DNA of 64,000 nucleotides, taken from positions 186,001 through 250,000 of IMG/VR virus record IMGVR_UViG_3300026078_000017. One strand, given 5' to 3'. This document shows positions 32,607 through 63,978 of the stretch, in pieces. The translations under genes and the position numbers were made by a program. Within the stretch, counting starts at the first letter, position 1, and each line of letters starts with the position of its first letter. Under the pieces are notes generated by a model, which made no database searches, was not told where the DNA came from, and saw nothing but the letters and a program-made list of their open reading frames with translations.

Positions 32607-32609
32607 AAA

Positions 32610-34414: not shown

Positions 34415-34422
34415 TTGATTCC

Positions 34423-35286: not shown

Positions 35287-35334
35287 TACAAGAGTAAGTC
35301 TGCGTTACAAAGAACCGAAAGGATTATGTGAGTC

Positions 35335-45629: not shown

Positions 45630-46154
45630 TCAACCTACAAAAAGATCCCACAAGAACTTACCAATTGCTGATAATAGGCCAGTTAGGACAAAACCGCCAA
45701 ACCACCAAGCACCCTTGCTAAGTTTGACTGCCTTCTGCAAATCCTTGTTGTCTTCTCCAGCAACCTTTTGGATTTGTTTAATCTTGCTGTCTGTGTCGTC
45801 AGTTCTCTTTTCAACCGAGGAAACTCTAATGTGCATCTTTTCATCAAAGTTAGAAAGGGCATCTACCTTATTGGTAAGGTTTGCAATCATTCCTTCAGAC
45901 TTGTGAAGCTTGGAGTAAATGCCATCTTCAGGGTCATAGAGACGATCAAGCTTTTCCTCAATGCGGCTGTCGTTCTGTTTGTGAGATTCAAAGTCGACGT
46001 TCAACTTGGCTTGCATACTCTTGATTTGAGACACCTCAGCCTCAAGTCTATCAAAGCCTCCGTTTAACACTTTGGCCGATCCAATCTTCTGATTGATTTG
46101 AGTTAGAAGTGCCTTGATTTGCTGGTCGTTTTCGTTGTCGTCAATTTTGGCCAT
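45630..46154 (-). CDS. Coiled-coil protein with C-terminal membrane anchor
   Basis: Long heptad region ending in AWWFGGFVLTGLLSAIGKFLW. Confidence 0.55.
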   Translation of the reverse strand: MAKIDDNENDQQIKALLTQINQKIGSAKVLNGGFDRLEAEVSQIKSMQAKLNVDFESHKQNDSRIEEKLDRLYDPEDGIYSKLHKSEGMIANLTNKVDALSNFDEKMHIRVSSVEKRTDDTDSKIKQIQKVAGEDNKDLQKAVKLSKGAWWFGGFVLTGLLSAIGKFLWDLFVG

Positions 46155-46208
46155 TACATCCCCCAAGTGAATACAACGATAAATATAAACAACAGACTGA
46201 TAAATAAG

Positions 46209-47612
46209 ATGACATCAACAACAACCTTCGTTGACAGAGAAGACTATCAGAAACAAATTCGCCTGTTATCTGAGGAGATTTTAACCAAATACAATGGAAT
46301 TTCTTCACTTTTAACAGAGGACTTGACCGCACTAGATTCTAATACTCTCCATCTTATTGGTAAAGTTTTACGCTCGAATTCACCTCTGGGGGTGAGTTTT
46401 TGTAAGCTCCTTGGTAACTCTTTGTTACAGGCTGAGTCACTAGCTGGCAACTCTGCCAACATTGGACTCATCTATTGCCTGAGCCTCCTTAAGAACGTTT
46501 TGGCATCAGATACCCTAAAAGGCATGTCAGATGTTGCACTTCTGTCTCAATATGAGACAATTCTCCTCAAGCTAAAAGAAGCCATCGAAAACAGCTATCA
46601 AGTTCCTAACTTGGAAGACCTGGAGCAGATTATCGAAAAGGTGTGTGAGGATCGTCTGTTGGCACAGGTTGTCGTTGGAGCAATGAAGGTTGCCGGACTT
46701 CAAGGAAAGATCTACTTTGAAAACGGCAGACAGCACAACTTTGTCGTAGAACGTAGAACTGGGTACAACTTCAAAACAAAACCCTACAAGTTCTTCTTGG
46801 ACTCAAGTGGAGTCTGGGAAAGACAGAATGTAAGGGTTCTGTTGATTGATGGTGTTCTTGAGCAGGTATCTGAGATTGATCAGATTTTGAATGCCGCTCT
46901 TACAAACAAACAGTCAGGTATGATTGTGTGCAGAGGTTTCTCTGAAGAAGTTATTGCCACTCTCAAGGCCAACTTTGACAGAGGACTAATCGACGTCATG
47001 CCCGTCAGAATCAACTCTGACCTGGAGTCCATTAATATTCTCAATGACATGGCAAGTGTGTGCGGCTGTGATATTGTTTCTTCCCTTAAGGGCGATTTGA
47101 TTTCTTGTGTAAAGTGGGATAGTCTTCCTGTTATCAACAAGGTTAGATGTCTTCTTGACAAGACAACCATTGAGGAAGAGAAAACCAGAAATAGTGTCAA
47201 TGCCCAAATCAAACACTTGTTGGCTAAAAGATTTGACAACCAAAACTTGGAAGACGTTGTGAACCTGATTGACGAGAGAATCAAGGCTCTAACCTCTGAG
47301 TCTGTTATTGTTAGACTTCCAGTTATGACCCATCTTCAAAACCAAACAGCAAAAGGGAAGTTCGATACTTCCCTTCGTACAGTCAAGGCAGTTTTGAATA
47401 ATGGCCTAATGACCTTTGGTGACCTGAGAAACAATTTTAAACCAAATAATACTCCACTCGACAGAGCAGTACTTCAAAGCCTAGAAGAAACCCTAAAACA
47501 TTTTGAGAATGTCAAGGTTTCTTCCTTGTCAGCTTACTTGGCCTTCAATGTTTGTGGTAAACAAACGTTGATGATTGCCTCAACTAACGGTGCTATTGTT
47601 GAGGAGGACTGA
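46209..47612 (+). CDS. GroEL/Cpn60-like chaperonin with degenerate ATP-binding motifs
   Basis: G..F apical entry, LLIDG.L..VSEI..IL, IVCRGFSEEVIATL.AN..RG, LNDMA..CG, ERI..L, C-terminal LMIASTNGAIVE; GDGTTT replaced by GNSANI. Confidence 0.75.
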   Translation: MTSTTTFVDREDYQKQIRLLSEEILTKYNGISSLLTEDLTALDSNTLHLIGKVLRSNSPLGVSFCKLLGNSLLQAESLAGNSANIGLIYCLSLLKNVLASDTLKGMSDVALLSQYETILLKLKEAIENSYQVPNLEDLEQIIEKVCEDRLLAQVVVGAMKVAGLQGKIYFENGRQHNFVVERRTGYNFKTKPYKFFLDSSGVWERQNVRVLLIDGVLEQVSEIDQILNAALTNKQSGMIVCRGFSEEVIATLKANFDRGLIDVMPVRINSDLESINILNDMASVCGCDIVSSLKGDLISCVKWDSLPVINKVRCLLDKTTIEEEKTRNSVNAQIKHLLAKRFDNQNLEDVVNLIDERIKALTSESVIVRLPVMTHLQNQTAKGKFDTSLRTVKAVLNNGLMTFGDLRNNFKPNNTPLDRAVLQSLEETLKHFENVKVSSLSAYLAFNVCGKQTLMIASTNGAIVEED

Positions 47613-51419: not shown

Positions 51420-51724
51420 CAGACACCAAAGAACAAACCCCAGCAGAGTTTTGGGAAGAAGAACAACCAGATCAGGTTTACATCAAACCACGTCTAGAGA
51501 TGAATCTTTCCCCAAAGCAGAAACAAGACTGTAGAGACATTGCCCTGGAGATTCGTAAGTTCGGAATCAACTACAGACAGAGATTGTTTCTGTTGGAACT
51601 CCTTGCCCTTGAGTGCGAAGATAATAACCTCATCCGAGATATCAAGGCTGCCATTGAGAAGTCCAGGGAGACTTTCGGCAAGCAACAGGAATCCGGGTTG
51701 ATTATTCCTGGGTCAAACGACTGA
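51416..51724 (+). CDS. Hypothetical protein (102 aa)
   Basis: ATGA overlap with the upstream gene. Confidence 0.65.
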   Translation: MTDTKEQTPAEFWEEEQPDQVYIKPRLEMNLSPKQKQDCRDIALEIRKFGINYRQRLFLLELLALECEDNNLIRDIKAAIEKSRETFGKQQESGLIIPGSND

Positions 51725-52112
51725 CCCGACACAAGTTGTGGTAGGCGTTTCTGATAAATGTCATCTGATAAATACCAACCGTCACAACCTGATTTTTGTA
51801 TAAGCAGCGATAGTACTCGCCATTTATCTGATCTGCTGACCTTGGCACAAACTCAAGAATAAGCAACCAACCCGGAAACATCAGGTTTGTTGGTCTACGA
51901 TAGTGACCATATTCATGCTTCTCTGAAAGCACTGACAAAGAAAAGTCAGCCCCTATAATGAGAAGGTCACCAGGCTCAAAGACGTCCGTTTGGAAGAGCG
52001 ATAATCCTTCGGGTGACTCCGTCTTCTGGGAACGTGTAGGTGTACTCGCCATATAGACTGTGTTCGTTTGGACCCGCTTCTCGATAGTAGTACCCTGGAG
52101 TACTCTTGTCAA
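51702..52112 (-). CDS. Small protein with FEPGDLL...LLILE pattern (same family as the right-arm array); start uncertain
   Basis: ORF track; motif similarity to array proteins. Confidence 0.5.
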   Translation of the reverse strand: MTRVLQGTTIEKRVQTNTVYMASTPTRSQKTESPEGLSLFQTDVFEPGDLLIIGADFSLSVLSEKHEYGHYRRPTNLMFPGWLLILEFVPRSADQINGEYYRCLYKNQVVTVGIYQMTFIRNAYHNLCRVSRLTQE

Positions 52113-53965: not shown

Positions 53966-55375
53966 ATGCGAAATTCCTCCTCCAAGTCCAAGTCCCCGGT
54001 TTCTAAGAAAACCAAACAGCCAAGGAAACACCTGGCAAAACAGCAGGCCAAAAACAACAAGAAGATGTCTTCCAAAAAGCAGCAGACTCAGAAGGAGAGT
54101 CTGTTAAGCCTGAAGTCTGGTGGGACATTTCCTAGAAGTGTAAGTTCTTCTTCTGCTGGTACCTGGAGTGTTCAACCAGTTTCCTCCACCGGAATACCTT
54201 CCACAAGCAACAGCACCACATTTGAACTAAAGAAGGCAATGTCCTCTCGACTCTTACACAAGGTCAAGGCATTTACTCCTGGGGAGATGGTTTTGAAAAA
54301 GCTAGCTGTGATGGAGTACATCGACCTGTACCTGAGGATTCTGAAAAAGGTGAACTCCACAAACACGCCATCCCTTGGAGGTTTAGGGGGAAGTCCAAAT
54401 GTGGTTATTGCCACTTCTGGGTACTCGGTGTCTCTCAGTCCAATCACCACTTCCACGCCAATGTCCACAAGCACCTCAGTGTCTGTTGGTGGTAGTAAAC
54501 CAATAAACCTGGGTTCGGCTTTTACACACATTGGTGGGTCGTCTTCTCCTTCCTCAGGTGCCTCGGTTGAACTTACCATTCTCCCACAACCCCAGTTTTC
54601 TAAAATAGACATGGAAGTCACCTTCGACGGGTCAGAGCTTGAAGAGGTAGTTTACAAAACCAAAAGCAAGCAAGCCGAGCCAGCCAAGTCAACCGCAAAG
54701 AAGGCAACCAAAAAGCTGGCCCAGGAGAAGGAAGGACCAATAACCAAGTCCTTGAGAGAAGCCACAGAAGGGTTGCCATCCTTTGCCAATATGTCCCCGG
54801 CAGGCATCCTGGGAACCTTGATTTCCGATAACCTAAACCCTGGGTTGAAGGATGCTGGAAATCTGGAAAGAGACATCACCAAGTCAACCTCTGCCACGGA
54901 CGTGATCTTTGCCGAAATGCTCCTGTGTGTGTCCAAGCCTTTTTTGAAAAAGAGGGACATCGAAAAGGAACAGGAAGAAGTCGAAAAACAACTCACCTTC
55001 AAGTTTCATGGACAAGGAGACAGGTCAGACTCTTCTTCCTCCATTACACCAGAACACCTCAGGGACTACGACCTGTCGAAACTGGAAAACCTGGAAGTCA
55101 CCACAGACCACACAGAAGACAGCGATGAAGAAGACCCAAAAGGGCTTTGGTCCAAGTCACTCGACACCGGCGGATTCACCTTTTCTGGAAGTTCTGCTGG
55201 GTATTTCGGAGAAGCCAACACGATCTTTCAGGAGTTCTGGAACCTTGAGAAAAACTGCAAGGTCGAGGTTGCCCTGAGTGCCTTTGAACCAAAACACCTG
55301 GAGGTCTATGACCCACAGGGGATTCACAAAAACTGGAAGTCCCTGTCAACCTTGAAGAAAGACCTTGGCGAGTAG
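53966..55375 (+). CDS. Low-complexity K/S/T-rich, largely disordered protein (469 aa)
   Basis: Long ORF; basic N-terminus, S/T tracts, acidic C-terminus. Confidence 0.65.
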   Translation: MRNSSSKSKSPVSKKTKQPRKHLAKQQAKNNKKMSSKKQQTQKESLLSLKSGGTFPRSVSSSSAGTWSVQPVSSTGIPSTSNSTTFELKKAMSSRLLHKVKAFTPGEMVLKKLAVMEYIDLYLRILKKVNSTNTPSLGGLGGSPNVVIATSGYSVSLSPITTSTPMSTSTSVSVGGSKPINLGSAFTHIGGSSSPSSGASVELTILPQPQFSKIDMEVTFDGSELEEVVYKTKSKQAEPAKSTAKKATKKLAQEKEGPITKSLREATEGLPSFANMSPAGILGTLISDNLNPGLKDAGNLERDITKSTSATDVIFAEMLLCVSKPFLKKRDIEKEQEEVEKQLTFKFHGQGDRSDSSSSITPEHLRDYDLSKLENLEVTTDHTEDSDEEDPKGLWSKSLDTGGFTFSGSSAGYFGEANTIFQEFWNLEKNCKVEVALSAFEPKHLEVYDPQGIHKNWKSLSTLKKDLGE

Positions 55376-55380
55376 TTCCC

Positions 55381-55956
55381 GTGAGTTCCTCAATCGCCAA
55401 GTTCCAAAAAGTCCTAAGAGACGCAGCTCGGTATCAAATCATCAAAAGGATGAACGAGATCGAGGCCGAAACAGACTTTGAGTCCAGTTGTTACCTTGCT
55501 GAGTCTACAAATAGTGTTGACATAACCCCCGAGATAACCAAAATGGCAAACCCAAGTTCTGACGATGAGAAACCCCTGGATGCAGACCTTCACGAAACCC
55601 TTAGGGCCAAGTATGGGACCTATGCTATTCCAAAATACATGTATGGTCAAGCTTTGGCACAAGGCAGTCTTTACAAAAGAAACGACAAGGGTGTTCCGGA
55701 CTGGGACAGAGGCAGAGTTACTTCCTCTTCTGGTATAGGAGACCCAAACCAGTATCTCTTCACCCAAAGTAACACAACGATTCCCTTGAACTACGCCTTC
55801 AAGACTGGTGACATCATTCTGATAACTTCAAGCCCACAGGCAGAACAGCCCTGGCAAAACGTCCTGGTGCTCCACAATAACGCCAGAGCCAGACTTTACA
55901 CAAACCCCGAGATTCTGTTGTACTGGGACCTTGTGAGCGAACCTGAGGTCAAGTAA
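55381..55956 (+). CDS. Hypothetical protein with C-terminal FKTGDIIL array-type domain
   Basis: ORF track; C-terminal motif similarity to array proteins. Confidence 0.6.
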   Translation: MSSSIAKFQKVLRDAARYQIIKRMNEIEAETDFESSCYLAESTNSVDITPEITKMANPSSDDEKPLDADLHETLRAKYGTYAIPKYMYGQALAQGSLYKRNDKGVPDWDRGRVTSSSGIGDPNQYLFTQSNTTIPLNYAFKTGDIILITSSPQAEQPWQNVLVLHNNARARLYTNPEILLYWDLVSEPEVK

Positions 55957-56236
55957 GGGATTTCAAAGTCCAAAATTCTCCCGGGAATTTTTTCCACAGG
56001 GAAATTCCCCAGGAAATTTTTTCCAAAATTGAAATTGGAATTTGAAAATTGACTTGCGCCAAAAAGTACAGGGGTCAAGCCTATTAACACAATAGGAACC
56101 CCCGGTCATTATGGACGTGGGGGGGTGGGGTCAATTTGATACCCCTGGTAGGGGTGGGGGTCAATACCCCCAATTGACGGGTATCAAGTTCGATACAGTG
56201 TCAAGTGTAGGTATCAAACGAGATACCTTGACAAGG
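55957..56236. repeat. Repeat/palindrome-rich non-coding element (origin or terminus candidate)
   Basis: GG[GA]AATTTTTTCC at 55983 and 56012; GGGAAATTCCCC at 55999; GGGGTCAA at 56071, 56127, 56157; GTATCAA at 56181, 56211; four G-tracts 56119-56160. Confidence 0.7.
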
Positions 56237-56256
56237 CATGTGATGTATGCTAGGGT
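56228..56256 (+). promoter_or_regulatory. Sigma70-type early promoter
   Basis: TTGACA-N17-TAGGGT with TGC just before -10; ATG at 56262. Confidence 0.7.
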
Positions 56257-56261
56257 GTATC

Positions 56262-56471
56262 ATGTCTGAGTGGCATCACAACTGGCAGCCTGGGTATCTA
56301 TATAGGTGCATACATCATCATGGCACATGGATTGCACCTGGCGACTTAGTTTTGTTATTGAATGAAGGTGGTGATGGTCGGTATGAGGTGTATCACTTCC
56401 GTCTTGGACAGAAGGCATTGGTATTGCATCATGATGCGGTGTGGCATTTTAAGTTAGAAGCCAAGCTTTGA
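56262..56471 (+). CDS. Small SH3/KOW-like array protein
   Basis: WQPGYLY...APGDLVLLL...YEVYHF. Confidence 0.6.
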   Translation: MSEWHHNWQPGYLYRCIHHHGTWIAPGDLVLLLNEGGDGRYEVYHFRLGQKALVLHHDAVWHFKLEAKL

Positions 56472-56752
56472 GGGTCAACATGGAAAATTGTTCTACTGAG
56501 GAGAAGGAGCATTTGTCTTTAACCAACATGCCTAGGGTTGGCGACTTGGTTTGGTTACCGAATTACTACACTCCGCACTTATATCTTGTGATACAAAATC
56601 CGGTAGTATCATGGTTGAACTCTACTGATGGATATTTGGTGGAGTTTTTGTGTGTTGACATGGTGACGCAGAGAAAAGGACTTCAGTGTTTCGAGCAGTA
56701 TCCCGATATTTGTATCGATAGCGATTATCGGATCATGTCGAGGTTTTGTTGA
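56468..56752 (+). CDS. Small SH3/KOW-like array protein
   Basis: MPRVGDLVW...LYLVI. Confidence 0.6.
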   Translation: MRVNMENCSTEEKEHLSLTNMPRVGDLVWLPNYYTPHLYLVIQNPVVSWLNSTDGYLVEFLCVDMVTQRKGLQCFEQYPDICIDSDYRIMSRFC

Positions 56753-56777
56753 CATGTTGTCATGGGTCTGCTAGTGT
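56749..56777 (+). promoter_or_regulatory. Sigma70-type early promoter
   Basis: TTGACA-N17-TAGTGT with TGC; GTG start at 56784. Confidence 0.7.
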
Positions 56778-56783
56778 GAGAGG

Positions 56784-57017
56784 GTGGAAGAGAACGTTGG
56801 AAAGTTATTGAGGGCGAAGGGATCCTGTCGAGCCTGGGCTTTGGTCTCAGTTGGGGAAGTGATTTGTCTTATCCATCCTTCGGATATCATTTTGGTCTTG
56901 AGGTGGCATAACTCACATTTTATTGTGTGGGACTTGACACAGCAATGCATGTACGAGGTTTTCTTTCTAGATTTTGCGCGTATGGACTGGGAAGAGGTAA
57001 CGAGTGAAGGATTCTGA
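56784..57017 (+). CDS. Small SH3/KOW-like array protein
   Basis: VGKLL...HPSDIILVL...FIVWDL. Confidence 0.55.
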   Translation: MEENVGKLLRAKGSCRAWALVSVGEVICLIHPSDIILVLRWHNSHFIVWDLTQQCMYEVFFLDFARMDWEEVTSEGF

Positions 57018-57312
57018 CTTTGGTGGGCTTTATAAGCCTTTGAGACGTGTTCCTAGGGCTGGGGATATTCTCTTGCAGGATTTTCCTCGGTGGGCTAGTG
57101 GCGAGCTTGGAATCTACATGGTAACCTCAGAGCCTGCATATCACACCACCAAGAGTCCATATTTGCCGCCAGGGACTTTAATTTGGCACATTGACTTGTG
57201 GAACTTGGTTGACTATGGATTTACGTGGTGGGAGCCGCAGGGTTTGGAAGATGGTAAGTTGACTTCTGAGAGTGTGCAAGGGTGGTATTTGGCGACTTAT
57301 GACAAAGTCTAG
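57004..57312 (+). CDS. Small SH3/KOW-like array protein
   Basis: VPRAGDIL...IYMVTSEP...LWNL. Confidence 0.6.
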   Translation: MKDSDFGGLYKPLRRVPRAGDILLQDFPRWASGELGIYMVTSEPAYHTTKSPYLPPGTLIWHIDLWNLVDYGFTWWEPQGLEDGKLTSESVQGWYLATYDKV

Positions 57313-57616
57313 CAAAAATCTTGTGCCGGCAACCTTTGTGCCAGAGGTTGGGGAGATTTATAGGATTAAGGGAAATTATGGCCGTGGCAATAGCAGCGTG
57401 CCATTTTACACAATCAATGACCGTTTGTCAGGGGATTTTAGTTTCTTGCACACGGGTGATCTTGTTCTTTTTCTTTGTGAGGAGGAGAATTCTCACTGGA
57501 AAGGCACGCCTTATGCTTGTAAGTGGTGGAAGGTCTTTGACTTGAAGAATCTTTTGGTTGGACATATCATGGATGACACCAGGACGATTGAGAGCTTGTC
57601 TAAGGACTTGGCATGA
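57299..57616 (+). CDS. Small SH3/KOW-like array protein
   Basis: VPEVGEIY...LHTGDLVLFL...WKVFDL...GHI. Confidence 0.6.
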   Translation: MTKSSKNLVPATFVPEVGEIYRIKGNYGRGNSSVPFYTINDRLSGDFSFLHTGDLVLFLCEEENSHWKGTPYACKWWKVFDLKNLLVGHIMDDTRTIESLSKDLA

Positions 57617-57879
57617 AAATTGACTTACAGGTTGGCGACGTGTTTCAGACCAAAGCCACAAGTCACGCGTGGATTGGGCCAAAGTATTTGTTACTTGACA
57701 AATGTCCGATTGAACCAAAATACGGCAATTTTGAGTCGGCGTTTGCACTTGACCTTGACAAGTGTGAATGTTTCAGGTTTGCTATTGCGAGCGACAGCAC
57801 ACAGTTGACCATGGGTTATGAGTTAACGGTTTGGTCTATGTCAGGCAAGATGAAAATCTATACCAGTGAAATGTTATGA
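57613..57879 (+). CDS. Small SH3/KOW-like array protein
   Basis: LQVGDVF...YLLL...ALDL; ATGA overlap. Confidence 0.6.
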   Translation: MKIDLQVGDVFQTKATSHAWIGPKYLLLDKCPIEPKYGNFESAFALDLDKCECFRFAIASDSTQLTMGYELTVWSMSGKMKIYTSEML

Positions 57880-58169
57880 CGTGTGAGTGCAAAAACTGTT
57901 GTTTCGTCCGCAAGCAAGAATTGCCTATGTGGACCTTTGGTGAACGTCCACCGAGGGTTGGTGACCATATCTTTCTTGACACGCCATCCAACATTTTCAG
58001 ACGACACAAGGCATCACACTTGATACTTTCGATTGACGAGCATGAAGATGAGTGGAAAATGTTCAAGTATTTTACACAGACGATTCAATACATGGACGGC
58101 AAGGATTCTAGGTCGCCATTGAATCTCAAAGTCACAGACAGTTATTGGTTGCTTGGAAGTGTGGATTGA
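57876..58169 (+). CDS. Small SH3/KOW-like array protein
   Basis: PPRVGDHI...HLIL; ATGA overlap. Confidence 0.6.
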   Translation: MTCECKNCCFVRKQELPMWTFGERPPRVGDHIFLDTPSNIFRRHKASHLILSIDEHEDEWKMFKYFTQTIQYMDGKDSRSPLNLKVTDSYWLLGSVD

Positions 58170-58177
58170 GGTATACT
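58149..58177 (+). promoter_or_regulatory. Sigma70-type promoter
   Basis: TTGCTT-N17-TATACT; ATG at 58189. Confidence 0.55.
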
Positions 58178-58188
58178 AGGTAATTGCG

Positions 58189-58461
58189 ATGTTTGAGAGA
58201 CCTTTATTTCCTCCTGTGTGTGAGTCTGGCATGTTATATGTGGTAACACACGCCATGCCATTTTACAAAAATTGTTTTGTAAATGTTCCACCTGACCTAT
58301 TGCCAACGATGTTGACTGGTCACAAGGTTTTGCCTCTTGGACCGATTCATGCACTTGAGTACAACTTCCAGCAAATATGGAATTTGACGTCAGGACATAT
58401 TGGGTTTGTGTTTGGTCCAACCACTTATCACTTTAGGAAGCTTGAGGAAGATGGCTTATAA
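58189..58461 (+). CDS. Small SH3/KOW-like array protein
   Basis: ESGMLY...IWNL.SGHIGFV. Confidence 0.55.
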   Translation: MFERPLFPPVCESGMLYVVTHAMPFYKNCFVNVPPDLLPTMLTGHKVLPLGPIHALEYNFQQIWNLTSGHIGFVFGPTTYHFRKLEEDGL

Positions 58462-58711
58462 CGAGCAAAAGCCTGAGGCTGGTGATGTGTGGATTGTCAC
58501 AAAGACAAGTGGCACTTATGTAAGTGTACCTGCCAGCATTTTCGGTTCCAACGAACATCGTGTAGCAAAACATATACCATATGGCACGTATGTTTTGTTT
58601 CTTGAGAATGCACAATTTAAGAATGCAAATGGCACTGCCATTATGGTAAATGGAGAAAAATGTTGGGTATCTCCGTATTATCTTCACGGAATAAGCCCGA
58701 TTCGAGGATGA
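58451..58711 (+). CDS. Small SH3/KOW-like array protein (paralogue of 58715)
   Basis: PEAGDVWIV...IPYGTYVLFLE...KCWV; GAGGA RBS. Confidence 0.65.
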   Translation: MAYNEQKPEAGDVWIVTKTSGTYVSVPASIFGSNEHRVAKHIPYGTYVLFLENAQFKNANGTAIMVNGEKCWVSPYYLHGISPIRG

Positions 58712-58714
58712 CTT

Positions 58715-58978
58715 ATGAGAGGCGCAAAGTTACCAAAAAAGGGTGACATCTGGATTGTCAAGTCACATTCGGTTTATGTGAGGGTTCCAGGCGCGTCACC
58801 TTATGCGGATATCACTACTCGATACGCAATTCCTGTGCCATACGGGTCATACCTCTTATTTCTTGAAGATATGCGGGATTTTCCAGAGCAGGTTGAAGTT
58901 TTGTGGAAAAATCAAAAGTGTTGGATAACATTTAGTTATGTGACTCAACACATGCAAGACATGGAGAGATTGAAGTGA
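58715..58978 (+). CDS. Small SH3/KOW-like array protein (paralogue of 58451)
   Basis: PKKGDIWIV...VPYGSYLLFLE...KCWI. Confidence 0.65.
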   Translation: MRGAKLPKKGDIWIVKSHSVYVRVPGASPYADITTRYAIPVPYGSYLLFLEDMRDFPEQVEVLWKNQKCWITFSYVTQHMQDMERLK

Positions 58979-59289
58979 CGATGACACCAGAAGAAAAAGA
59001 CAACTTGACAAGCGTTTTCTACCTGCTCATGCGGGATTATGTTCCAACTGGCACAATTGCAAAGCTCGTGCAGGACTTGGAGAAACATCCAGGTCCGCAC
59101 GAGTTTACGAGCAAGTATCTTGCGGCTTACGCTGGCGAGCTTGTAGAACGCATCGCTAAGGTGCCGCAAAGCCCTTCTTCCAATAAACCTTCGCCTTCCT
59201 TGGAAAGTCTACGGAAGGAGATTGAGGTTTTGCGGCAGAAGATTGCCGAGATGGGTCCGATTCGGAATGACGGTTTCCAGGACCCGTAA
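58975..59289 (+). CDS. Hypothetical helical protein
   Basis: GTGA overlap; helical, does not carry the array motif. Confidence 0.6.
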   Translation: MTMTPEEKDNLTSVFYLLMRDYVPTGTIAKLVQDLEKHPGPHEFTSKYLAAYAGELVERIAKVPQSPSSNKPSPSLESLRKEIEVLRQKIAEMGPIRNDGFQDP

Positions 59290-59293
59290 ACAC

Positions 59294-59518
59294 TCAGATC
59301 TTATCATGTTGCCAATATTTGGCAATGAGAGAAATAATTTCTTCTTTCTCAACCTGCCCTGTCTTGAGGTTGAGTTTAGTTAGTGTGTAATAATTCCGGC
59401 CATCGGGCTTTTCCACACGTAACACTAAGTGAATGGATTTGGTCTCAAGGTGGGTGATTAGGTCGCCTGGGGACAGGTCAGTGACCAGAATCTCTTTGTA
59501 GTGGGAAAGCCTAGTCAC
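59294..59518 (-). CDS. Small SH3/KOW-like array protein (opposite strand)
   Basis: LSPGDLI...IHLVL...LNL..G. Confidence 0.6.
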   Translation of the reverse strand: MTRLSHYKEILVTDLSPGDLITHLETKSIHLVLRVEKPDGRNYYTLTKLNLKTGQVEKEEIISLIAKYWQHDKI

Positions 59519-59688
59519 GTTGCCGATTCTGCCAGAAGAGCGTGAGCCCTTGCCTGAGAGTCTTCCTGGTACTGACGCTCACGTGAGGAGCTGAACCAGG
59601 TGAGGGATTTCAATCGACTCTGAATCAGGTCATCCTGAGACTTTTCGACGTTGGACTTCTTGCGCTTGGGGTTCTTGTTGGTCGGCAT
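59515..59688 (-). CDS. Small basic protein (57 aa)
   Basis: Manual translation MPTNKNPKRKKSNVEKSQDDLIQSRLKSLTWFSSSRERQYQEDSQARAHALLAESAT*; GTGA overlap; upstream TTGCTC-N16-TAATAT promoter. Confidence 0.6.
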   Translation of the reverse strand: MPTNKNPKRKKSNVEKSQDDLIQSRLKSLTWFSSSRERQYQEDSQARAHALLAESAT

Positions 59689-59712
59689 AAGGAGATATTA
59701 GCAGAAACGACA

Positions 59713-59745
59713 AAGGGAGCAACCTATTTTTGTAGGTGCTCCCTT
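59713..59745. terminator. Intrinsic terminator hairpin
   Basis: AAGGGAGC-a-ACCTAT-tttt-GTAGGT-GCTCCCTT just downstream of the 59751 stop. Confidence 0.7.
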
Positions 59746-59750
59746 CTTAT

Positions 59751-60341
59751 TCAGCGTCGGCAAATCGTTGGTTGTTTCACACGAACCCAATCCTCGTGAG
59801 GATCCAAGGCAAGCAAGGTATCTAGATTCTTGGAACAAACGAACATGGACACCGGCCCAGCCCCTTCACTTTCGCTCAGAAAGTCGTTGTACTCACTTGC
59901 AACCATCCGAGTCCATACGAAACATGCCGGACTATCGAACATGCGTGAAGGCTTGGGCAAGTGATTGAAATTTCGTCCGTTACTGAACGATTGAGTGTGA
60001 GAGAAAAGGGCATTTGCCAGATTCTCCATTTTCCAATCGTCGAACAAATTTGAGAAAAGACGAAAGCCATCCAAAGCATATCGTGATTTCTTGGCGTTTT
60101 CGCTTTTGCCAGTCCAGTAGATTCGATTGACTAGAACCTTACAGATCCGCGTCTGATGAGGCTTAGTGTGAGCTTCTCGAATCAACGATTCGGCTTCTTT
60201 GGCAGAATGGGCAGTAGTATAGTGCTCGTAAATGATCGCATCACGGTGGTTCGTGAAAGACTTCTCGCCACGATGCGAGCCCATGAGATCTTTGCGGGTA
60301 TCATTGCCACGGGCCAAAACCAAAACCTGATAGTCAGCCAT
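59751..60341 (-). CDS. Hypothetical protein (196 aa)
   Basis: GAGGA RBS; followed by a terminator. Confidence 0.65.
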   Translation of the reverse strand: MADYQVLVLARGNDTRKDLMGSHRGEKSFTNHRDAIIYEHYTTAHSAKEAESLIREAHTKPHQTRICKVLVNRIYWTGKSENAKKSRYALDGFRLFSNLFDDWKMENLANALFSHTQSFSNGRNFNHLPKPSRMFDSPACFVWTRMVASEYNDFLSESEGAGPVSMFVCSKNLDTLLALDPHEDWVRVKQPTICRR

Positions 60342-60425
60342 TTTATATCCTCGGTGTTTGTCAGTCGCCCTGTGCTGTTGACAAAGAACGTTTTACCAGA
60401 ATCTCAGAGACGTGCAAGGATTATT

Positions 60426-60752
60426 TTAGCGTCCAACCACTGACACAGGACAACCATGCGTCAAAAGAAAATCTTGACGACGAAGTGGAGAAGTGTGCCA
60501 AAATTCTGTTCGCAATCGAACGATGCAGGAAATCCGGGAAATTGGTTCACGTGAACATAACATTGGCACAACAATTGGCAGACATTGATCAAGCATACGA
60601 TAGCCGTGTGACTGCACGCGGTCTTCACCAGCACCATAAATAGGACCTGACGCAAAAGATCCACGATCAAGTCGAGTCACGTAAACACGCGGTCCACAAC
60701 CGCTTCCAAGACTGCTGAATAGAACCAACAGAACTAACAGAAAACTTTTCAT
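60426..60752 (-). CDS. Putative lipoprotein / secreted Cys-rich small protein
   Basis: MKSFLLVLLVLFSSLGSG-C signal with lipobox-like Cys; upstream TTGACT-N16-TAAAGT promoter. Confidence 0.5.
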   Translation of the reverse strand: MKSFLLVLLVLFSSLGSGCGPRVYVTRLDRGSFASGPIYGAGEDRVQSHGYRMLDQCLPIVVPMLCSREPISRISCIVRLRTEFWHTSPLRRQDFLLTHGCPVSVVGR

Positions 60753-60757
60753 CCTAC

Positions 60758-60816
60758 ACTTTATCACACCTTCCCAATGAGTCAAGGATTGACATTGGCT
60801 TTCTTTCTGCTACTCT
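60758..60816. promoter_or_regulatory. Back-to-back divergent sigma70 promoters
   Basis: GTCAA-gga-TTGAC inverted repeat (60781-60793) supplies both -35 boxes; minus TTGACT-N16-TAAAGT, plus TTGACA-N16-TACTCT. Confidence 0.6.
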
Positions 60817-60825
60817 TCCCAGGTC

Positions 60826-61137
60826 ATGCCTCAGATTTGTGATTTCTCTAGAGAACGTCTTCTGCGTCCACCTCCAATTGGCGCACTTATTGCGTGCGAA
60901 AGAGGTACGAATGCAAATGTAAACCGACCGAGAAAACTCGGTGGACCACACGAGGAATTCTTTTTGGTCCTCAGTGTCAAGATGGACACATACAGCAATA
61001 CCTCGGAGATAGTCAAGAAGTGGTTGATTGACGTCTTGGACTTACAAACCCTAACAACCACATGGATTTGGCCGCGTGAGGACGAGGAAGGAAATCTCAA
61101 GTTCATGAATGCTGATTGGTGGTTGCTGCATGAGTGA
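60826..61137 (+). CDS. Small SH3/KOW-like array protein
   Basis: PPPIGALI...FFLVL...VLDL...W. Confidence 0.6.
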   Translation: MPQICDFSRERLLRPPPIGALIACERGTNANVNRPRKLGGPHEEFFLVLSVKMDTYSNTSEIVKKWLIDVLDLQTLTTTWIWPREDEEGNLKFMNADWWLLHE

Positions 61138-61399
61138 AAAATTCCTTGATTGGGTTGACCTTGACTACACCGACATAACATATCCGCCAAAGGTCGGAGA
61201 CTTCATTTCTCCTAATGAATTTGGGCGTGATGACATTTATATGGTCATCAGAACCGAAAGAATTGACCCTGACTGTTTGCTTGTTGTTTTGTGGGACCTG
61301 AGAAAAAATTGCAAGGCTTTCAATGTTTGGCACTTAATGCCGGACACCAAGAAAGTGCGTTGGCCTTATTCTAGATGGGCGGTTGTTACGCTTCCATGA
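61130..61399 (+). CDS. Small SH3/KOW-like array protein
   Basis: PPKVGDFI...IYMVI...LWDL. Confidence 0.6.
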   Translation: MSEKFLDWVDLDYTDITYPPKVGDFISPNEFGRDDIYMVIRTERIDPDCLLVVLWDLRKNCKAFNVWHLMPDTKKVRWPYSRWAVVTLP

Positions 61400-61626
61400 G
61401 TGAAAAACATTACGACTTTGTTGGAAAATCATATTTGATACCCTTTGGTGTGTCAGTGTTCGGATTTGGCGTTACGAATCCTGGACACAATGAGTGGTTA
61501 AAGCCTGGCACAACATTTCTGGTGCTGAGTGACAGCCAAACAACAGGGGAATATTTTACTGTCTTGCATCTTGGTCTCAGGTATGACATAAGCTATAGTC
61601 GCCTTATGGACTGTCGTGAACTATGA
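61396..61626 (+). CDS. Small SH3/KOW-like array protein
   Basis: FVGKSY...LKPGTTFLVL...FTVLH. Confidence 0.6.
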   Translation: MSEKHYDFVGKSYLIPFGVSVFGFGVTNPGHNEWLKPGTTFLVLSDSQTTGEYFTVLHLGLRYDISYSRLMDCREL

Positions 61627-61952
61627 CTTTCATCAACCTGAAAAATCTTGTGGATGTTCAGCCTGGAACGTTGCTGAAAGCTCGGGGGTGTGAGGGAAGC
61701 TTTGCCTTGGTTCTTGAGCCACCCACACTAAACACAACACAAACAAACAGTGATACTTCTTTTCACCTAAATTGTAACTGTTGGCATATTTCTGAGAAGA
61801 GTCTTTACGGTACGAAAAGACAACCAACCGATTTACCAAAGCCAGATTTTCTCACCATAAAAATGCACTTCTTTCCACATCAGGGATTAAGTCTGGCGAC
61901 ATGTGTCGGATGGGAAATATACGACGGTGAGGACATAAATCATGGAACTTGA
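61623..61952 (+). CDS. Small SH3/KOW-like array protein
   Basis: VQPGTLL...FALVLEPP...CW. Confidence 0.6.
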   Translation: MTFINLKNLVDVQPGTLLKARGCEGSFALVLEPPTLNTTQTNSDTSFHLNCNCWHISEKSLYGTKRQPTDLPKPDFLTIKMHFFPHQGLSLATCVGWEIYDGEDINHGT

Positions 61953-62175
61953 TCGACTACCACAAATCGGCGAGACATGGACGGTCAAGGAAGATCACCA
62001 AGCTTTCGCCATTGACCAAAACTACAAGCCGTGGCGATTTGTACCAGGTATGTATATTCTCTTCCTTGATACAGTCAGGTCACTAGACATAACAGATGAA
62101 TCAACACCCATTCTGTGTCAAGGTGTACGTTATCACATCATGCGACTCTATATCAGGGCCTTAGTACCTCTGTGA
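61942..62175 (+). CDS. Small SH3/KOW-like array protein
   Basis: LPQIGETWTV...VPGMYILFLD. Confidence 0.6.
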   Translation: MELDRLPQIGETWTVKEDHQAFAIDQNYKPWRFVPGMYILFLDTVRSLDITDESTPILCQGVRYHIMRLYIRALVPL

Positions 62176-62182
62176 GACACAA

Positions 62183-62512
62183 ATGGAATTTCATAAATCA
62201 AAAATGATAGAAGTCAAAGTTGGTCAGGTGTATCAAATTCGAGAAGAGACAGATCCGGATCTGTGGTGTCACCTAATGATTTTTCAAGACGAAAGAGATA
62301 GTCAAGGCAACTATCCCCACAAGCACTTGGAATACCCTTCTAAGGTCGTAATAACCCGTGAGAAGCATATTTCAAACGGACGTTGGGTGATTGAGGTTCA
62401 GGTGGCAAATGTCATCTCACCGCTTCTGAGTGACCTGGAAAAACGTTGGATTTGTCGAGAAGGAGATCTCAGAGAAGATACAATTCAACTGGTAGATCAT
62501 GGAACCCCATAA
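62183..62512 (+). CDS. Small SH3/KOW-like array protein
   Basis: VKVGQVYQI...VVIT...WVIEV. Confidence 0.55.
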   Translation: MEFHKSKMIEVKVGQVYQIREETDPDLWCHLMIFQDERDSQGNYPHKHLEYPSKVVITREKHISNGRWVIEVQVANVISPLLSDLEKRWICREGDLREDTIQLVDHGTP

Positions 62513-62789
62513 AAATCATAGACACTATGTGTCAAGGAAAAATCTCCCTAGTGTTGGTGACATAATCCAGTGGGGCGAATGTAAGCCCGGTGAGCATTAT
62601 TTGCTGGTTTTGGAAGAGCCAAAGTTGATACAAGAAGCCAAAGATTTTTCCAGTCCCCTATTAAATGCCATAATAGACACACATTGGCAACTTTTGTGTC
62701 TCGACATTGATTCTGGAACCCTGGCACACAATTGGTTTTGGGATGATGTTATCAGCGACTATGTGTTCATTAGTCGACTTGACCCATGA
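62499..62789 (+). CDS. Small SH3/KOW-like array protein
   Basis: LPSVGDII...YLLVLEEP...LDI.SG. Confidence 0.6.
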   Translation: MEPHKNHRHYVSRKNLPSVGDIIQWGECKPGEHYLLVLEEPKLIQEAKDFSSPLLNAIIDTHWQLLCLDIDSGTLAHNWFWDDVISDYVFISRLDP

Positions 62790-62807
62790 CCAAAGCCATG
62801 CTAGACT
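62779..62807 (+). promoter_or_regulatory. Sigma70-type early promoter
   Basis: TTGACC-N17-TAGACT with TGC; ATG at 62818. Confidence 0.65.
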
Positions 62808-62817
62808 ATTTGGTTCT

Positions 62818-63111
62818 ATGTTTCACAAAGGTACAGTAAAAAAACTGAAACTGCTTAAAGAAGTTCCCAAGAATGGCACGCTTCTTGTTCAGCAGCACAA
62901 CAATGGCAATAATGTGTCGCTTGATTTTTCTCTCTATCTGGTCTTGGATTCTGAGTATATCGCGACTCGACGTGACTGGCGCTTAAATCTATGGTGTATC
63001 ACAGCAGGATATAACACAAGGTGGAATCCTCCGGGCTTTCCAAATGGAAAGCTAAATCTTGACTGGACAACAGGACCCGTTAAGTGGTATGTGTTTAGTG
63101 AGCCCGAATGA
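62818..63111 (+). CDS. Small SH3/KOW-like array protein
   Basis: VPKNGTLL...LYLVL...LWCI; start moved to the ATG after the promoter. Confidence 0.6.
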   Translation: MFHKGTVKKLKLLKEVPKNGTLLVQQHNNGNNVSLDFSLYLVLDSEYIATRRDWRLNLWCITAGYNTRWNPPGFPNGKLNLDWTTGPVKWYVFSEPE

Positions 63112-63413
63112 CACGTCAGAAGAAAGTCAAGCATTTACCTGGCAAGATTCTTGAAATGCGTGCCAATGGATGTGTGATGTATTTTTTCTCAGATGAAGAC
63201 AATAATACTTCCAACCTCAAACACCTTCACAAGGGAAATCTCTTTATGATACTTGACACGGTCAAGTCAGAGGATGTTCCAGGCGAAGCCTGGCAAAAAA
63301 GCAACCCTCAAGAAAAGTGGTGTCGAGTTTGGCACTTCAAGTCTAATCTGATTGGATACATTGCCCTAGAGGACATAATCGTCTTCACAGAAGAAACTCG
63401 GTGGTTGACATGA
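63108..63413 (+). CDS. Small SH3/KOW-like array protein
   Basis: LPGKIL...LHKGNLFMILD...RVWHF...IGYI. Confidence 0.6.
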   Translation: MTRQKKVKHLPGKILEMRANGCVMYFFSDEDNNTSNLKHLHKGNLFMILDTVKSEDVPGEAWQKSNPQEKWCRVWHFKSNLIGYIALEDIIVFTEETRWLT

Positions 63414-63622
63414 GCACTATTCTGCGAACAGGAGACATTATCCGTTATCGGCCAGCAGCCCTTGGTACAGTATCCTTGGTTTTGACAGAACCAATTTTGG
63501 TAAACAGTCGTTGTTGGCGTGTTAAAACGTGGGACCTAACCCGAAATGAACTGTCGGGTGCAGTCTTTTACACAATCAAGAACAATGCCGATCCCAACTG
63601 GGAAGTTATTTACCACATATGA
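63410..63622 (+). CDS. Small SH3/KOW-like array protein (paralogue of 63619)
   Basis: LRTGDIIRYR...LVLTEP...TWDL...DPNWEVI. Confidence 0.65.
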   Translation: MSTILRTGDIIRYRPAALGTVSLVLTEPILVNSRCWRVKTWDLTRNELSGAVFYTIKNNADPNWEVIYHI

Positions 63623-63978
63623 CCAAAGGTGACAACAGGTATTTGCCAGAAGTAGGTGACTTGATCCGTTACCGTCGTCAGGAGTTTATCGAAGGTTTGC
63701 ACCTGGTTCTTTCTACTCCAGAAAAAGCCAGAAATTCAGCTTATGCCATGTATGTGGGTGGCGTGCCTGTGCATATGGACTCTTGGGTTGTGTCAGTTTG
63801 GGAATTGACTGGAATGTGTGAAAGCGGTGCAAGCTTTCAGAAGATCAACAGTCCAGATCCCAATTGGGAAATCGTCCTCAAGTTCAAGCCATCACACACG
63901 AGTCACCAGACACAGGTGCAAGGTGCAAGTATTCCGGAATGTCCTGATTGCTCAGGAAGTACACCAGACCGTCTGTAA
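63619..63978 (+). CDS. Small SH3/KOW-like array protein (paralogue of 63410)
   Basis: LPEVGDLIRYR...LVLSTP...VWEL...DPNWEIV; C-terminal CPDC. Confidence 0.65.
   Translation: MTKGDNRYLPEVGDLIRYRRQEFIEGLHLVLSTPEKARNSAYAMYVGGVPVHMDSWVVSVWELTGMCESGASFQKINSPDPNWEIVLKFKPSHTSHQTQVQGASIPECPDCSGSTPDRL

What the first reader, a model, noticed from the sequence alone, without database searches (positions are those of the whole stretch)
56262..63978. Tandem array of about 20 divergent paralogous SH3/KOW-like mini-proteins
Seen: most ORFs from 56.2 kb to the window end are 70-120 aa and share an architecture: N-terminal P-x-[VI]-G-[DE]-[LIV] (PRVGDL, PEVGEI, PKVGDF, PSVGDI, PEVGDL, LQVGDV...), a [YF]-L-V-[LI] strand often followed by E-P, a variable loop, then [VW]-[WDN]-L and G-x-I. 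Adjacent pairs are closer (58451/58715 share PYG.Y.LFLE..KCW; 63410/63619 share GD.IRYR..DPNWE, with DNA GATCCCAA[CT]TGGGAA), showing ongoing tandem duplication. Outliers occur at 51702, 52456, 55381, 59294 and probably in the capsid-mimic protein. Genes are coupled by ATGA overlaps behind strong early promoters. Inference: a diversified library of one small beta-barrel scaffold with variable loops, used as an early arsenal of binders for host takeover or anti-defence. The SH3/KOW fold itself is inferred, not shown.
Basis: partly seen in the sequence, partly recalled or inferred. Interest (0 to 1): 0.85.

Follow-up and report, generated by a model that had tools for sequence, protein, structure and literature searches.

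The report
Expanded SH3-like mini-protein family in jumbo phage
A 320-kb soil jumbo phage carries about 34 very divergent copies (20 in this window) of one small beta-barrel protein unknown to the family libraries; the copies evolve and turn over much faster than their neighbours, as expected of proteins in an arms race with the host, but their targets are unknown.

Summary
The window is part of IMG/VR contig IMGVR_UViG_3300026078_000017 (320,479 bp).

- **Family.** In leave-one-out HMM tests, 20 of the small ORFs between 56.2 and 64.0 kb belong to one divergent family. The array runs about 6 kb past the window end, on both strands, giving about 34 members in 13.6 kb.
- **Fold.** AlphaFold2 models of two members (pLDDT 80 and 87) and ESM models of three members give an all-beta small barrel. 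Its nearest neighbours are EF-P/eIF5A domain I, CarD/TRCF RID, the Dda SH3 domain and bacterial SH3 domains. No structural match is significant.
- **Known families.** Pfam, PHROGs, NCBIfam and PADLOC give no hit.
- **Expansion.** Adjacent pairs and one collinear three-gene block show growth by duplication.
- **Turnover.** A syntenic relative has only 13-16 members. Neighbouring genes there are 44-85% identical, but family members are at most 26-51% identical and 21 of 34 have no detectable counterpart.
- **Promoters.** A motif, TTGACA-N13-15-TGCTANNNT, ends 5-9 nt before the first start codon of each operon. It occurs only in this region (3 matches against 0.03 expected).

The function (diversified intracellular binders made early in infection) is inferred, not shown.

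The parts
56228..56256 (+). Promoter-like element TTGACA-N14-TGCTAGGGT, ending 5 nt before the ATG at 56262 (leaderless arrangement)
   Evidence: 3 matches in the window against 0.03 expected, and none in positions 1-56000
56262..56471 (+). Family member (the longest ORF starts at 56247)
   Evidence: leave-one-out HMM 7.9 bits against a decoy maximum of 3.8
56480..56752 (+). Family member. Collinear paralogue of 62499. Its counterpart in L014 is 50.6% identical
56749..56777 (+). Promoter-like element TTGACA-N14-TGCTAGTGT, ending 6 nt before the GTG at 56784
56784..57017 (+). Family member
   Evidence: leave-one-out 17.2 bits
57004..57312 (+). Family member, subgroup A (paralogue of 62761)
   Evidence: jackhmmer pair; AlphaFold2 pLDDT 86.6, same strand order as the 62499 model; Foldseek neighbours EF-P domain I, Dda SH3, eIF5A and CarD; sequence link to the core family is weak
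57299..57616 (+). Family member, subgroup B (paralogue of 63108)
   Evidence: leave-one-out 16.5 bits, 10.5 bits with the subgroup left out; ESM model neighbours are bacterial SH3 domains
57613..57879 (+). Borderline family member
   Evidence: leave-one-out 5.6 bits, reached by 2 of 177 decoys; kept by the iterated HMM
57876..58169 (+). Family member
58451..58711 (+). Family member, subgroup C (adjacent paralogue of 58715)
58715..58978 (+). Family member, subgroup C
   Evidence: ESM model neighbours are SH3_3, SH3_4 and the RecD2 SH3 domain, TM 0.55-0.70
59294..59518 (-). Family member on the opposite strand
   Evidence: leave-one-out 15.3 bits
60789..60816 (+). Promoter-like element TTGACA-N13-TGCTACTCT, ending 9 nt before the ATG at 60826
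60826..61137 (+). Family member
   Evidence: leave-one-out 14.3 bits
61130..61399 (+). Family member
   Evidence: leave-one-out 18.0 bits
61396..61626 (+). Family member
   Evidence: leave-one-out 6.9 bits with no decoy above it
61623..61952 (+). Family member
   Evidence: leave-one-out 14.0 bits
61942..62175 (+). Family member, joined to subgroup C
   Evidence: jackhmmer from 58400; leave-one-out 12.1 bits
62183..62512 (+). Doubtful member
   Evidence: leave-one-out 4.2 bits; 2.5 bits with the iterated HMM
62499..62789 (+). Family member, used as the reference for the structure model
   Evidence: leave-one-out 22.6 bits; AlphaFold2 pLDDT 80.2, pTM 0.70, six strands; Foldseek; ESM Atlas
62761..63111 (+). 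Family member, subgroup A (paralogue of 57004)
63108..63413 (+). Family member, subgroup B (paralogue of 57299)
63410..63622 (+). Family member, subgroup D (adjacent paralogue of 63619)
   Evidence: 16.0 bits with the subgroup left out; HHalign 92.9% against the rest of the family
63619..63978 (+). Family member, subgroup D. Its positional counterpart in L005 is about 26% identical, while the neighbouring gene there is 62.5% identical
55381..55956 (+). Possible distant member: C-terminal residues 133-168 of a 191-aa protein
   Evidence: 7.6 bits, above all shuffled decoys but weak; 38.8% identical to its L014 counterpart, so also fast-evolving
51702..52112 (-). Possible distant member
   Evidence: 7.4 bits; HHalign 36% against 0.1-3% for the other controls; 33.9% identical to its L014 counterpart while its neighbours are 72-83% identical

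Best explanation
This is a lineage-specific expansion of a previously undescribed family of single-domain proteins of 70-120 aa in a 320-kb jumbo phage. There are about 34 copies in 13.6 kb, 20 of them in the window.

Shown:
- The copies share a P-x-V-G-D turn, an h-h-L-V-L strand, a W-x-h-x-h-h-D-L hairpin and a C-terminal W.
- These positions are the conserved core of a predicted six-stranded small beta-barrel of the SH3/KOW/Tudor class. The loops between them vary widely in length and sequence.
- The array grew by single-gene tandem duplication and by at least one multi-gene block duplication.
- Members diverge and turn over far faster than the interspersed non-family genes.
- The genes lie in tightly coupled operons. 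Each operon follows a near-consensus promoter-like element (a -35 box plus an extended -10) placed so that the mRNA would have no leader.

Inferred:
- Host RNA polymerase transcribes the array early in infection.
- The proteins act in the cytoplasm as a diversified set of small binders or inhibitors, each with loops tuned to a different host target, such as a defence system or a piece of host machinery. In this reading they are kept diverse by an arms race, as anti-defence and host-takeover genes of other phages are.
For: - **Extent.** The array continues past the window end, on both strands.
- **Fold.** AlphaFold2 models with pLDDT 80.2 and 86.6 and the same strand order. Both share neighbours: EF-P domain I, eIF5A, Dda SH3, CarD/TRCF RID. 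ESM models of three members point to EF-P KOW or bacterial SH3 domains.
- **Scaffold and loops.** Conserved columns are G20, D21 and the hydrophobic positions in the strands. The loops have low occupancy.
- **Duplication.** Four adjacent pairs, plus the collinear pairs 56468~62499, 57004~62707 and 57272~63108.
- **Rapid evolution and turnover.** In the syntenic relative L014, non-family genes are 44-85% identical. Only 13 of 34 members have any hit there, at 26-51%. L014 has 13-16 members, and 9 genes where the window has 26.
- **Rarity.** A profile search of 1.84 billion representative proteins gave 20 hits, 15 of them from this phage itself.
- **Promoters.**. The motif is also present in L014.
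- **Coupling.**
- **Charge.** Members are mostly acidic or neutral (median pI 6.1) and rich in Trp. That fits protein binding better than general nucleic-acid binding.
Against: - There is no functional evidence of any kind. No member matches a characterised protein in Pfam, PHROGs, NCBIfam, PADLOC or PDB sequences.
- No Foldseek match reaches E < 1e-3, and TM-scores are only 0.4-0.5.
- The two AlphaFold2 runs used the same alignment, so they are not fully independent.
- Two subgroups are tied to the core family mainly by fold and motif, not by significant sequence scores.
- Fast divergence could also reflect relaxed constraint. dN/dS could not be measured: the paralogues are saturated and the relative's four samples are identical.
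- The host, and hence its sigma factor, is unknown, so calling the genes 'early' is an inference.
Confidence: 0.55

Rival explanations
1. The proteins bind nucleic acid, acting as Sm/KOW/EF-P-like RNA binders or Cren7-like DNA binders. [quoted passage not shown]
For: The structural neighbours are mostly nucleic-acid or ribosome/RNAP-associated barrels: the XC5848 Sm-like variant, EF-P/eIF5A domain I, ribosomal proteins, Cren7 and CarD. T4 offers a precedent of early SH3/LSm-like paralogues (PMC12152347).
Against: Median pI is 6.1, and 21 of 35 members are acidic. No basic position is conserved. There is no N-terminal Sm helix and no KOW or Sm Pfam hit. HHalign against T4 GoF and MotB.1 gives 0.3-0.4%. 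About 34 fast-diverging copies are hard to reconcile with binding a conserved nucleic-acid target.
Confidence: 0.15
2. The expansion is largely neutral: duplicates of one small gene in a recombination-prone, dispensable region, most of them with no function of their own and drifting toward loss.
For: Copy number differs twofold between relatives, and many members have no counterpart. Divergence is very high. No function is detectable.
Against: All members keep intact ORFs, the core-forming residues, start codons coupled to the upstream stop, and a position inside promoter-driven operons. The paralogues are old (38% identity or less), yet none is visibly broken. Independent arrays persist in phages with different GC content (L007 51%, L009 53%, L014 49%).
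Confidence: 0.12
3. The domain is a diverged CarD/TRCF-RID-type Tudor domain. The proteins would dock on the host RNA polymerase beta subunit to redirect or shut off host transcription.
For: The family profile aligns its PxVGD...YLVL half to the same motif of CarD, at E about 0.7-1.5 in PDB sequence searches. CarD and TRCF-RID appear among the Foldseek neighbours of both models.
Against: None of these scores is significant. HHalign against the E. coli Mfd RID segment gives 0.1%. Pfam CarD_TRCF_RID was not hit. One conserved target would not explain 34 divergent copies.
Confidence: 0.08
4. They are virion or assembly components, such as small decoration, internal or chaperone proteins that occur as paralogous sets in jumbo phages.
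For: Jumbo phages are known to carry paralogous virion proteins (general knowledge).
Against: The array lies outside the baseplate/structural block. It has its own promoter class, which is absent from the structural and replication part of the window. The proteins are very small, poorly conserved and variable in number between relatives, unlike structural proteins.
Confidence: 0.05

Closest known systems
[quoted passage not shown] 2021, PMC7824862)
   Same: It is a jumbo phage with about 35 paralogues of one tiny domain. The authors called that expansion 'unprecedented' and left its function unknown.
   Different: The fold differs (zinc ribbon against an all-beta SH3-like barrel), as do the phage lineage and host. 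Here there is also evidence of rapid turnover against a syntenic relative, and of a dedicated promoter class.
T4 early proteins GoF / MotB.1 / Frd.2 (LSm-like/SH3-topology family, PMC12152347)
   Same: These are small phage proteins with a bent five-stranded beta-barrel. They are divergent paralogues that ordinary BLAST does not recognise, are non-essential in the laboratory, and have unknown function.
   Different: T4 has three copies, each with an extra C-terminal domain. This phage has about 34 single-domain copies in tandem. No sequence relationship was found (HHalign 0.3-0.4%).
SH3-like small beta-barrels of the KOW / EF-P domain I / eIF5A / CarD-TRCF RID (Tudor-like) / helicase SH3 type
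   Same: They have the same predicted fold class and are the best structural neighbours of both models. They also share the G-D-h-h first strand and the h-L-V-L second strand seen in CarD.
   Different: No significant sequence or structural score was found. An extra strand is inserted after the second strand. The KOW glycine pattern is absent. The proteins stand alone rather than forming domains of larger ones.
Multigene families of large eukaryotic DNA viruses (e.g. ASFV MGF, poxvirus host-range families) and phage anti-defence gene clusters (comparison from general knowledge)
   Same: They are tandem, fast-evolving paralogues of variable copy number that sit in variable genome regions. They are expressed early and are used against host defences.
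   Different: Those families have experimentally shown roles. For this one there is none, and the protein folds are unrelated.

Membership tests
SH3-like small beta-barrel fold class | Five or six antiparallel strands forming a small, strongly bent barrel, with structural neighbours drawn from that class | tested here: met
   AlphaFold2 models are all-beta with six strands, at pLDDT 80.2 and 86.6. The top Foldseek and ESM Atlas neighbours are EF-P domain I, eIF5A, CarD/TRCF RID, Dda/RecD2 SH3, bacterial SH3 and an Sm-like variant. Caveat: the best E-values are 0.04-0.14 and TM-scores 0.4-0.6, and these are predicted models only.
KOW motif family (Pfam KOW; NusG/L24/EF-P type) | Match to the KOW or EFP_N sequence profile, with its conserved glycine pattern | tested here: not met
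   No Pfam hit for any of 23 members at E <= 1. One NCBIfam IF-5A hit at E 0.065 in 1 of 47 members.
Sm/LSm (Hfq-like) | An N-terminal alpha-helix followed by five strands carrying the Sm1/Sm2 motifs, and a ring-forming oligomer | tested here: not met
   The models have no helix of 4 or more residues before the strands. No Pfam LSM or Hfq hit. Oligomeric state cannot be tested with these tools.
T4 GoF/MotB.1/Frd.2 family | Detectable profile similarity to the GoF or MotB.1 N-terminal domain | tested here: not met
   HHalign probabilities of 0.34% and 0.37%.
CarD/TRCF RNA-polymerase-interacting domain (Tudor-like) | Significant profile match to the CarD_TRCF RID, and binding to the RNAP beta subunit | tested here: inconclusive
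   PDB profile hits to CarD at E 0.7-1.5, covering only the first two strands. Foldseek E 0.24-0.9. HHalign against the E. coli Mfd RID gives 0.14%. RNAP binding cannot be tested here.
Lineage-specific expansion / tandem paralogue array | Many homologous genes clustered in one genome, with copy number differing between relatives | tested here: met
   About 34 members in 13.6 kb, against 13-16 in the syntenic relative L014. Duplication signatures were found.
Phage early (host-RNAP-transcribed) gene class | Sigma-70-type promoters in front of the operons, and transcription in the first minutes of infection | tested here: inconclusive
   The promoter-like motif TTGACA-N13-15-TGCTANNNT is specific to this region and correctly placed. 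Timing cannot be tested without an infection experiment.
Known anti-defence or defence proteins | Match to a described family | tested here: not met
   PADLOC gave only single chance-level hits. PHROGs gave none. No anti-defence library was available.

The most novel reading that the evidence does not exclude
The array is a germline-encoded repertoire of binders. One SH3-like scaffold would carry about 34 loop variants, each neutralising a different host defence or host factor, and gain and loss of copies would track the defence repertoires of the hosts met by each phage lineage. In that case the family would be a rich, untapped source of new anti-defence proteins, and a natural counterpart of engineered binder scaffolds built on small SH3-like barrels.
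Probability: 0.25. Interest if true: 0.85.

Novelty: new variant of a known kind. Interest (0 to 1): 0.62.

Why it matters
Large expansions of one tiny domain are very rare in phages. A comparative survey of 224 jumbo phages called a ~35-copy zinc-ribbon expansion in phage G 'unprecedented' (PMC7824862). This is a second case on the same scale, with a different fold and in an uncultured soil phage lineage.

It comes with direct comparative evidence that the copies diverge and turn over much faster than their neighbours. That pattern is typical of genes at the phage-host interface.

If the members are specific inhibitors, the locus offers dozens of candidate anti-defence or host-takeover proteins built on one small scaffold that models with good confidence. 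The family also defines a new protein family absent from Pfam and PHROGs. The region-specific leaderless promoter motif gives a handle on the temporal programme of an uncultured jumbo phage.

Tried and rejected
- **Close phage relatives.** Megablast of the region against 50,697 phage records found nothing.
- **Curated libraries.** Pfam, PHROGs, NCBIfam and PADLOC scans of all members gave no family.
- **Spurious jackhmmer link.** The link between 57613 and the 400-aa protein at 6599-7801(-) does not hold up (BLASTP E 0.77).
- **P0019.** This polysaccharide-export protein matched only through its repeated 'KPGDII' motif, so it is a chance hit.
- **P0015.** This 615-aa protein has about 9 'QPKVGEIW' repeats. 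It matches only the first-strand motif at 8 bits or less per repeat, so it is not counted as a member.
- **CheY guess.** My guess that ORF ext 65445-65801(-) is a CheY-like receiver got no Pfam support.
- **Other SH3-like families.** T4 GoF and MotB.1 and the E. coli Mfd RID gave no profile similarity.
- **More relatives through a neighbour gene.** Searches for relatives of the conserved neighbour 65086(-) in IMG/VR and JGI metagenomes returned only this contig itself.
- **Word-indexed search.** The family profile added almost nothing in that protein search.
- **Population variation.** The relative's contigs from four samples are 100% identical, so no dN/dS estimate was possible.
- **DNA repeats.** Repeat search in the array found only short matches at the conserved codons, so there is no sign of recent duplication.
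- **Generic promoter scan.** The sigma-70 scan did not single out the real motif. It emerged only from aligning the sequences upstream of the operons.

Full report
**Where the window comes from.** The window is part of IMG/VR contig IMGVR_UViG_3300026078_000017 (= Ga0207702_10000008), which is 320,479 bp long. Window position 1 corresponds to about contig position 186,004. The rest of the window encodes baseplate-like proteins, a nucleotide-sugar and glycosyltransferase cluster, a primase-polymerase, PhoH and a GroEL-like protein. It is therefore a jumbo tailed phage. It has no close relative among 50,697 deposited phage genomes.

**Checking the observation.** Plain pairwise methods (BLASTP, jackhmmer) connect only small subgroups. 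In the extended coordinates defined below, these are:
- {57004, 62707}
- {57272, 63108}
- {58400/58451, 58715, 61942}
- {63401, 63619}
- {64224-, 64447-, 64700}, beyond the window
- {68068-, 68301-}, beyond the window

I therefore tested the family as a whole.
- **Leave-one-out HMM.** For each of 41 candidate ORFs I rebuilt the alignment and HMM without that ORF. I then scored the ORF against 200 shuffles of itself and 177 unrelated ORFs of the same phage. About 29 ORFs scored 7-24 bits against decoy maxima of 3-8 bits. This includes ORFs with no close paralogue: 56784 (17.2), 59294- (15.3), 60826 (14.3), 61109 (18.0), 61623 (14.0) and 62499 (22.6).
- **Whole subgroups left out.** Subgroups D, E, F and B stayed clearly above or near the top of the decoys. 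Subgroups A {57004, 62707} and C {58451, 58715, 61942} dropped to 2-6 bits. HHalign of each subgroup against the rest gave 93, 60, 60, 40, 17 and 11%, against 0.1-3% for non-member controls.

The family is real. In the window it has 20 members. ORFs 58189 and 58975 and the minus-strand genes 59515, 59751 and 60426 are not members, and 62183 is doubtful.

**The array is larger than the finding.** I fetched the contig beyond the window (L003, L004). I call the window joined to this sequence 'ext'; ext coordinates continue the window numbering. The family continues on both strands to about ext 69.9 kb. An HMM iterated over all ORFs of the fetched loci, with one shuffled decoy per ORF, admitted 34 ORFs of this phage and no decoy. 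The array thus spans about 13.6 kb. It is interrupted by a few unrelated small genes.

**Fold.**
- An AlphaFold2 model of the 62499 product, built on a 47-sequence family alignment, has pLDDT 80.2 and pTM 0.70. It has six strands and no helix of four or more residues.
- A model of the weakly linked 57004 product has pLDDT 86.6 and pTM 0.77, with the same strand order.
- Foldseek against the PDB found no hit at E < 1e-3 for either model. Both gave the same neighbours: EF-P domain I, eIF5A, the SH3 domain of T4 Dda, and CarD/TRCF RID. TM-scores were 0.4-0.46 on the query, and up to 0.62 on the 66-residue EF-P domain.
- BFVD gave only uncharacterised small phage proteins at TM about 0.5.
- Single-sequence ESM Atlas models are independent of my alignment. 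Their nearest structures are the EF-P KOW-like domain and SNF2 N-terminal domains for 62499. For 58715 they are bacterial SH3_3/SH3_4 and the RecD2 SH3 domain. For 57299 they are bacterial SH3 domains.

The SH3/KOW-like barrel is therefore supported at the level of fold class for four subgroups. It is a prediction, and membership of any named family failed:
- Pfam, PHROGs, NCBIfam and PADLOC gave no hit.
- HHalign against T4 GoF and MotB.1 gave 0.3-0.4%.
- HHalign against the E. coli Mfd RID gave 0.1%.
- CarD matched at E about 1 only.

**Anatomy of the domain.** In the 47-sequence alignment, G20 is invariant and D21 is present in 77% of sequences. The conserved hydrophobic positions are:
- positions 22-23 (strand 1);
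- positions 34-38 (strand 2; L36 85%, L38 81%);
- W63, L68 and L70 (the strand 3/4 hairpin, consensus 'W..h.h.DL');
- W88 and position 90 (last strand).

The segments between these have low occupancy and very variable length. The proteins are mostly acidic to neutral (median pI 6.1, with 21 of 35 below 6.5) and unusually rich in Trp (3.1% against 1.3%).

**How the array grew.** Four of the strongest pairs are adjacent genes: 58451/58715, 63410/63619, 64224-/64447- and 68068-/68301-. Three further strong pairs are collinear between two blocks: 56468~62499, 57004~62707 and 57272~63108. This indicates duplication of a multi-gene segment. The duplications are old. Protein identity is 38% or less, and the only DNA repeats are short stretches at the conserved codons. 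'Ongoing' duplication is therefore not shown.

**Distribution and rate of evolution.** A profile search of 1.84 billion representative proteins found only 20 hits at E < 1e-3, and 15 of them are this phage's own proteins. The external hits lead to metagenomic contigs that also carry arrays:
- L007/L008, with at least 12 members, one of them (P0016) a fusion of two full domains;
- L009, with at least 5 members;
- L005, with 1 member.

Through a conserved neighbouring gene I found a closer relative, L014 (an 82-kb contig). It is syntenic with ext 47.6-73.9 kb. Most non-family genes there are 44-85% identical to ours. A few larger proteins (53966 and 55381) and ORF 51702 are only 31-39% identical. 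Only 13 of the 34 family members have any BLASTP hit at E < 1e-3 in L014, at 26-51% identity, and 21 have none. L014 has 13-16 members. Between the counterparts of 55381 and 63884- it has 9 small genes, where the window has 26. In L005, similarly, the positional counterpart of 63619 is about 26% identical while the adjacent gene is 62.5% identical. The family therefore diverges and turns over much faster than its surroundings. I could not separate positive selection from relaxed constraint. The paralogues are saturated, and the four samples carrying the relative are 100% identical.

**Expression signals.** Eight of about 20 plus-strand junctions are 4-nt ATGA/GTGA overlaps. Most others overlap by 8-29 nt. 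Shine-Dalgarno motifs are mostly absent. Aligning the sequences upstream of the first gene of each run revealed a shared element, TTGACA-N13-15-TGCTANNNT. This is a consensus -35 box plus an extended -10. It ends 5-9 nt before the start codon, which would give leaderless mRNAs. It occurs three times in the window, at 56228, 56749 and 60789. The chance expectation is 0.03, and there is no match in the first 56 kb. There are five more in the next 10 kb, including two back-to-back divergent pairs, and the motif recurs at equivalent places in L014. It also marks the small-gene region as a separate transcription class. That the class is 'early' is an inference from general phage biology.

**Interpretation.** The best-supported reading is a lineage-specific expansion of a new small beta-barrel family, expressed as coupled operons from host-type promoters. 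The expansion itself is shown; the promoter function rests on motif evidence. Diversification at the phage-host interface is inferred. Cytoplasmic binders or inhibitors of host targets is the most likely mode of action. The reasons are the fixed core with variable loops, the acidic character, the rapid turnover, the genomic setting, and the analogy with other early and anti-defence phage genes. The rivals cannot be excluded: nucleic-acid binding, a CarD-like RNAP binder, neutral duplicates, and virion components. I weigh them in the rival-explanations section. The closest precedent in scale is the ~35-copy zinc-ribbon expansion of Bacillus phage G, described as unprecedented (PMC7824862). [quoted passage not shown] There is no sequence relationship to the T4 proteins.

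**Verdict.** The fold inference is supported at class level, and the functional inference is plausible but untested. This is a new protein family and a new instance of a rare phenomenon, rather than a new kind of system.

Noticed in passing
window 56228-56256, 56749-56777, 60789-60816; ext 64712(-), 64718(+), 65835(-), 71654(-), 71825(-); L014 7114-7142(-), 9967-9994(+), 11558-11585(-), 12734-12762(-): A region-specific promoter-like motif, TTGACA-N13-15-TGCTANNNT, ends 5-9 nt before start codons, which implies leaderless mRNAs. It is absent from window 1-56000. It also precedes non-family small genes, and it forms back-to-back divergent pairs around a palindromic CCTTGACAAGG.
   Followed up: partly
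window 55957-56261: This 305-nt intergenic region lies upstream of the array. It holds two copies of AAATTCyCCsGGrAATTTTTTCCA (55973 and 56002) and several GGTATCAA/TTGATACC and GGGGTCAAT repeats. These may be operator or regulatory sites.
   Followed up: no
window 60426-60785 (-): This 119-aa ORF has an internal start followed by MKSFLLVLLVLFSSLGSGC. That looks like a lipoprotein signal peptide with a lipobox cysteine, so it may be a phage lipoprotein sitting inside the array.
   Followed up: no
window 53966-55375 (+), 55381-55956 (+), 51702-52112 (-): These three larger proteins just upstream of the array are also fast-evolving: 31%, 39% and 34% identical to their L014 counterparts, while their neighbours are 61-85% identical. 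The 469-aa protein is Ser/Thr-rich and of low complexity.
   Followed up: partly
L007 10001-10540 (P0016); L010 4576-6423 (P0015): In other phages the module occurs fused. P0016 has two full domains in one 179-aa protein. A 615-aa protein, P0015, carries about 9 'QPKVGEIW...WY' repeats that share only the first-strand motif, with weak hits to DUF4222 and DUF6763.
   Followed up: partly
window 58975-59289 (+) versus L014 5749-5973 (-): The non-family gene 58975 is 82% identical to a gene in the relative. There it lies next to the counterpart of ext 67509(-), not inside the first array block. The array region has therefore been rearranged between the two phages.
   Followed up: no
ext 69973-70257 (-) (= L004 4418-4702 +); L014 3732-4007: The conserved small gene just beyond the array is 56% identical to its L014 counterpart. 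That counterpart carries a precomputed Pfam KH_KhpA-B hit, suggesting a KH-type RNA-binding protein. An ORF with HNH-like Cys/His motifs follows, at L004 3610-3948.
   Followed up: no
window 20000-36700 (-): This is a long cluster of sugar-nucleotide enzymes. It includes a 668-aa fusion of an RmlD-like domain with GDP-mannose 4,6-dehydratase, further epimerases and a dehydrogenase, and two glycosyltransferases. It is followed by a primase-polymerase (38020-40008), PhoH (43953-45311) and a GroEL-like protein (46119-47612).
   Followed up: partly
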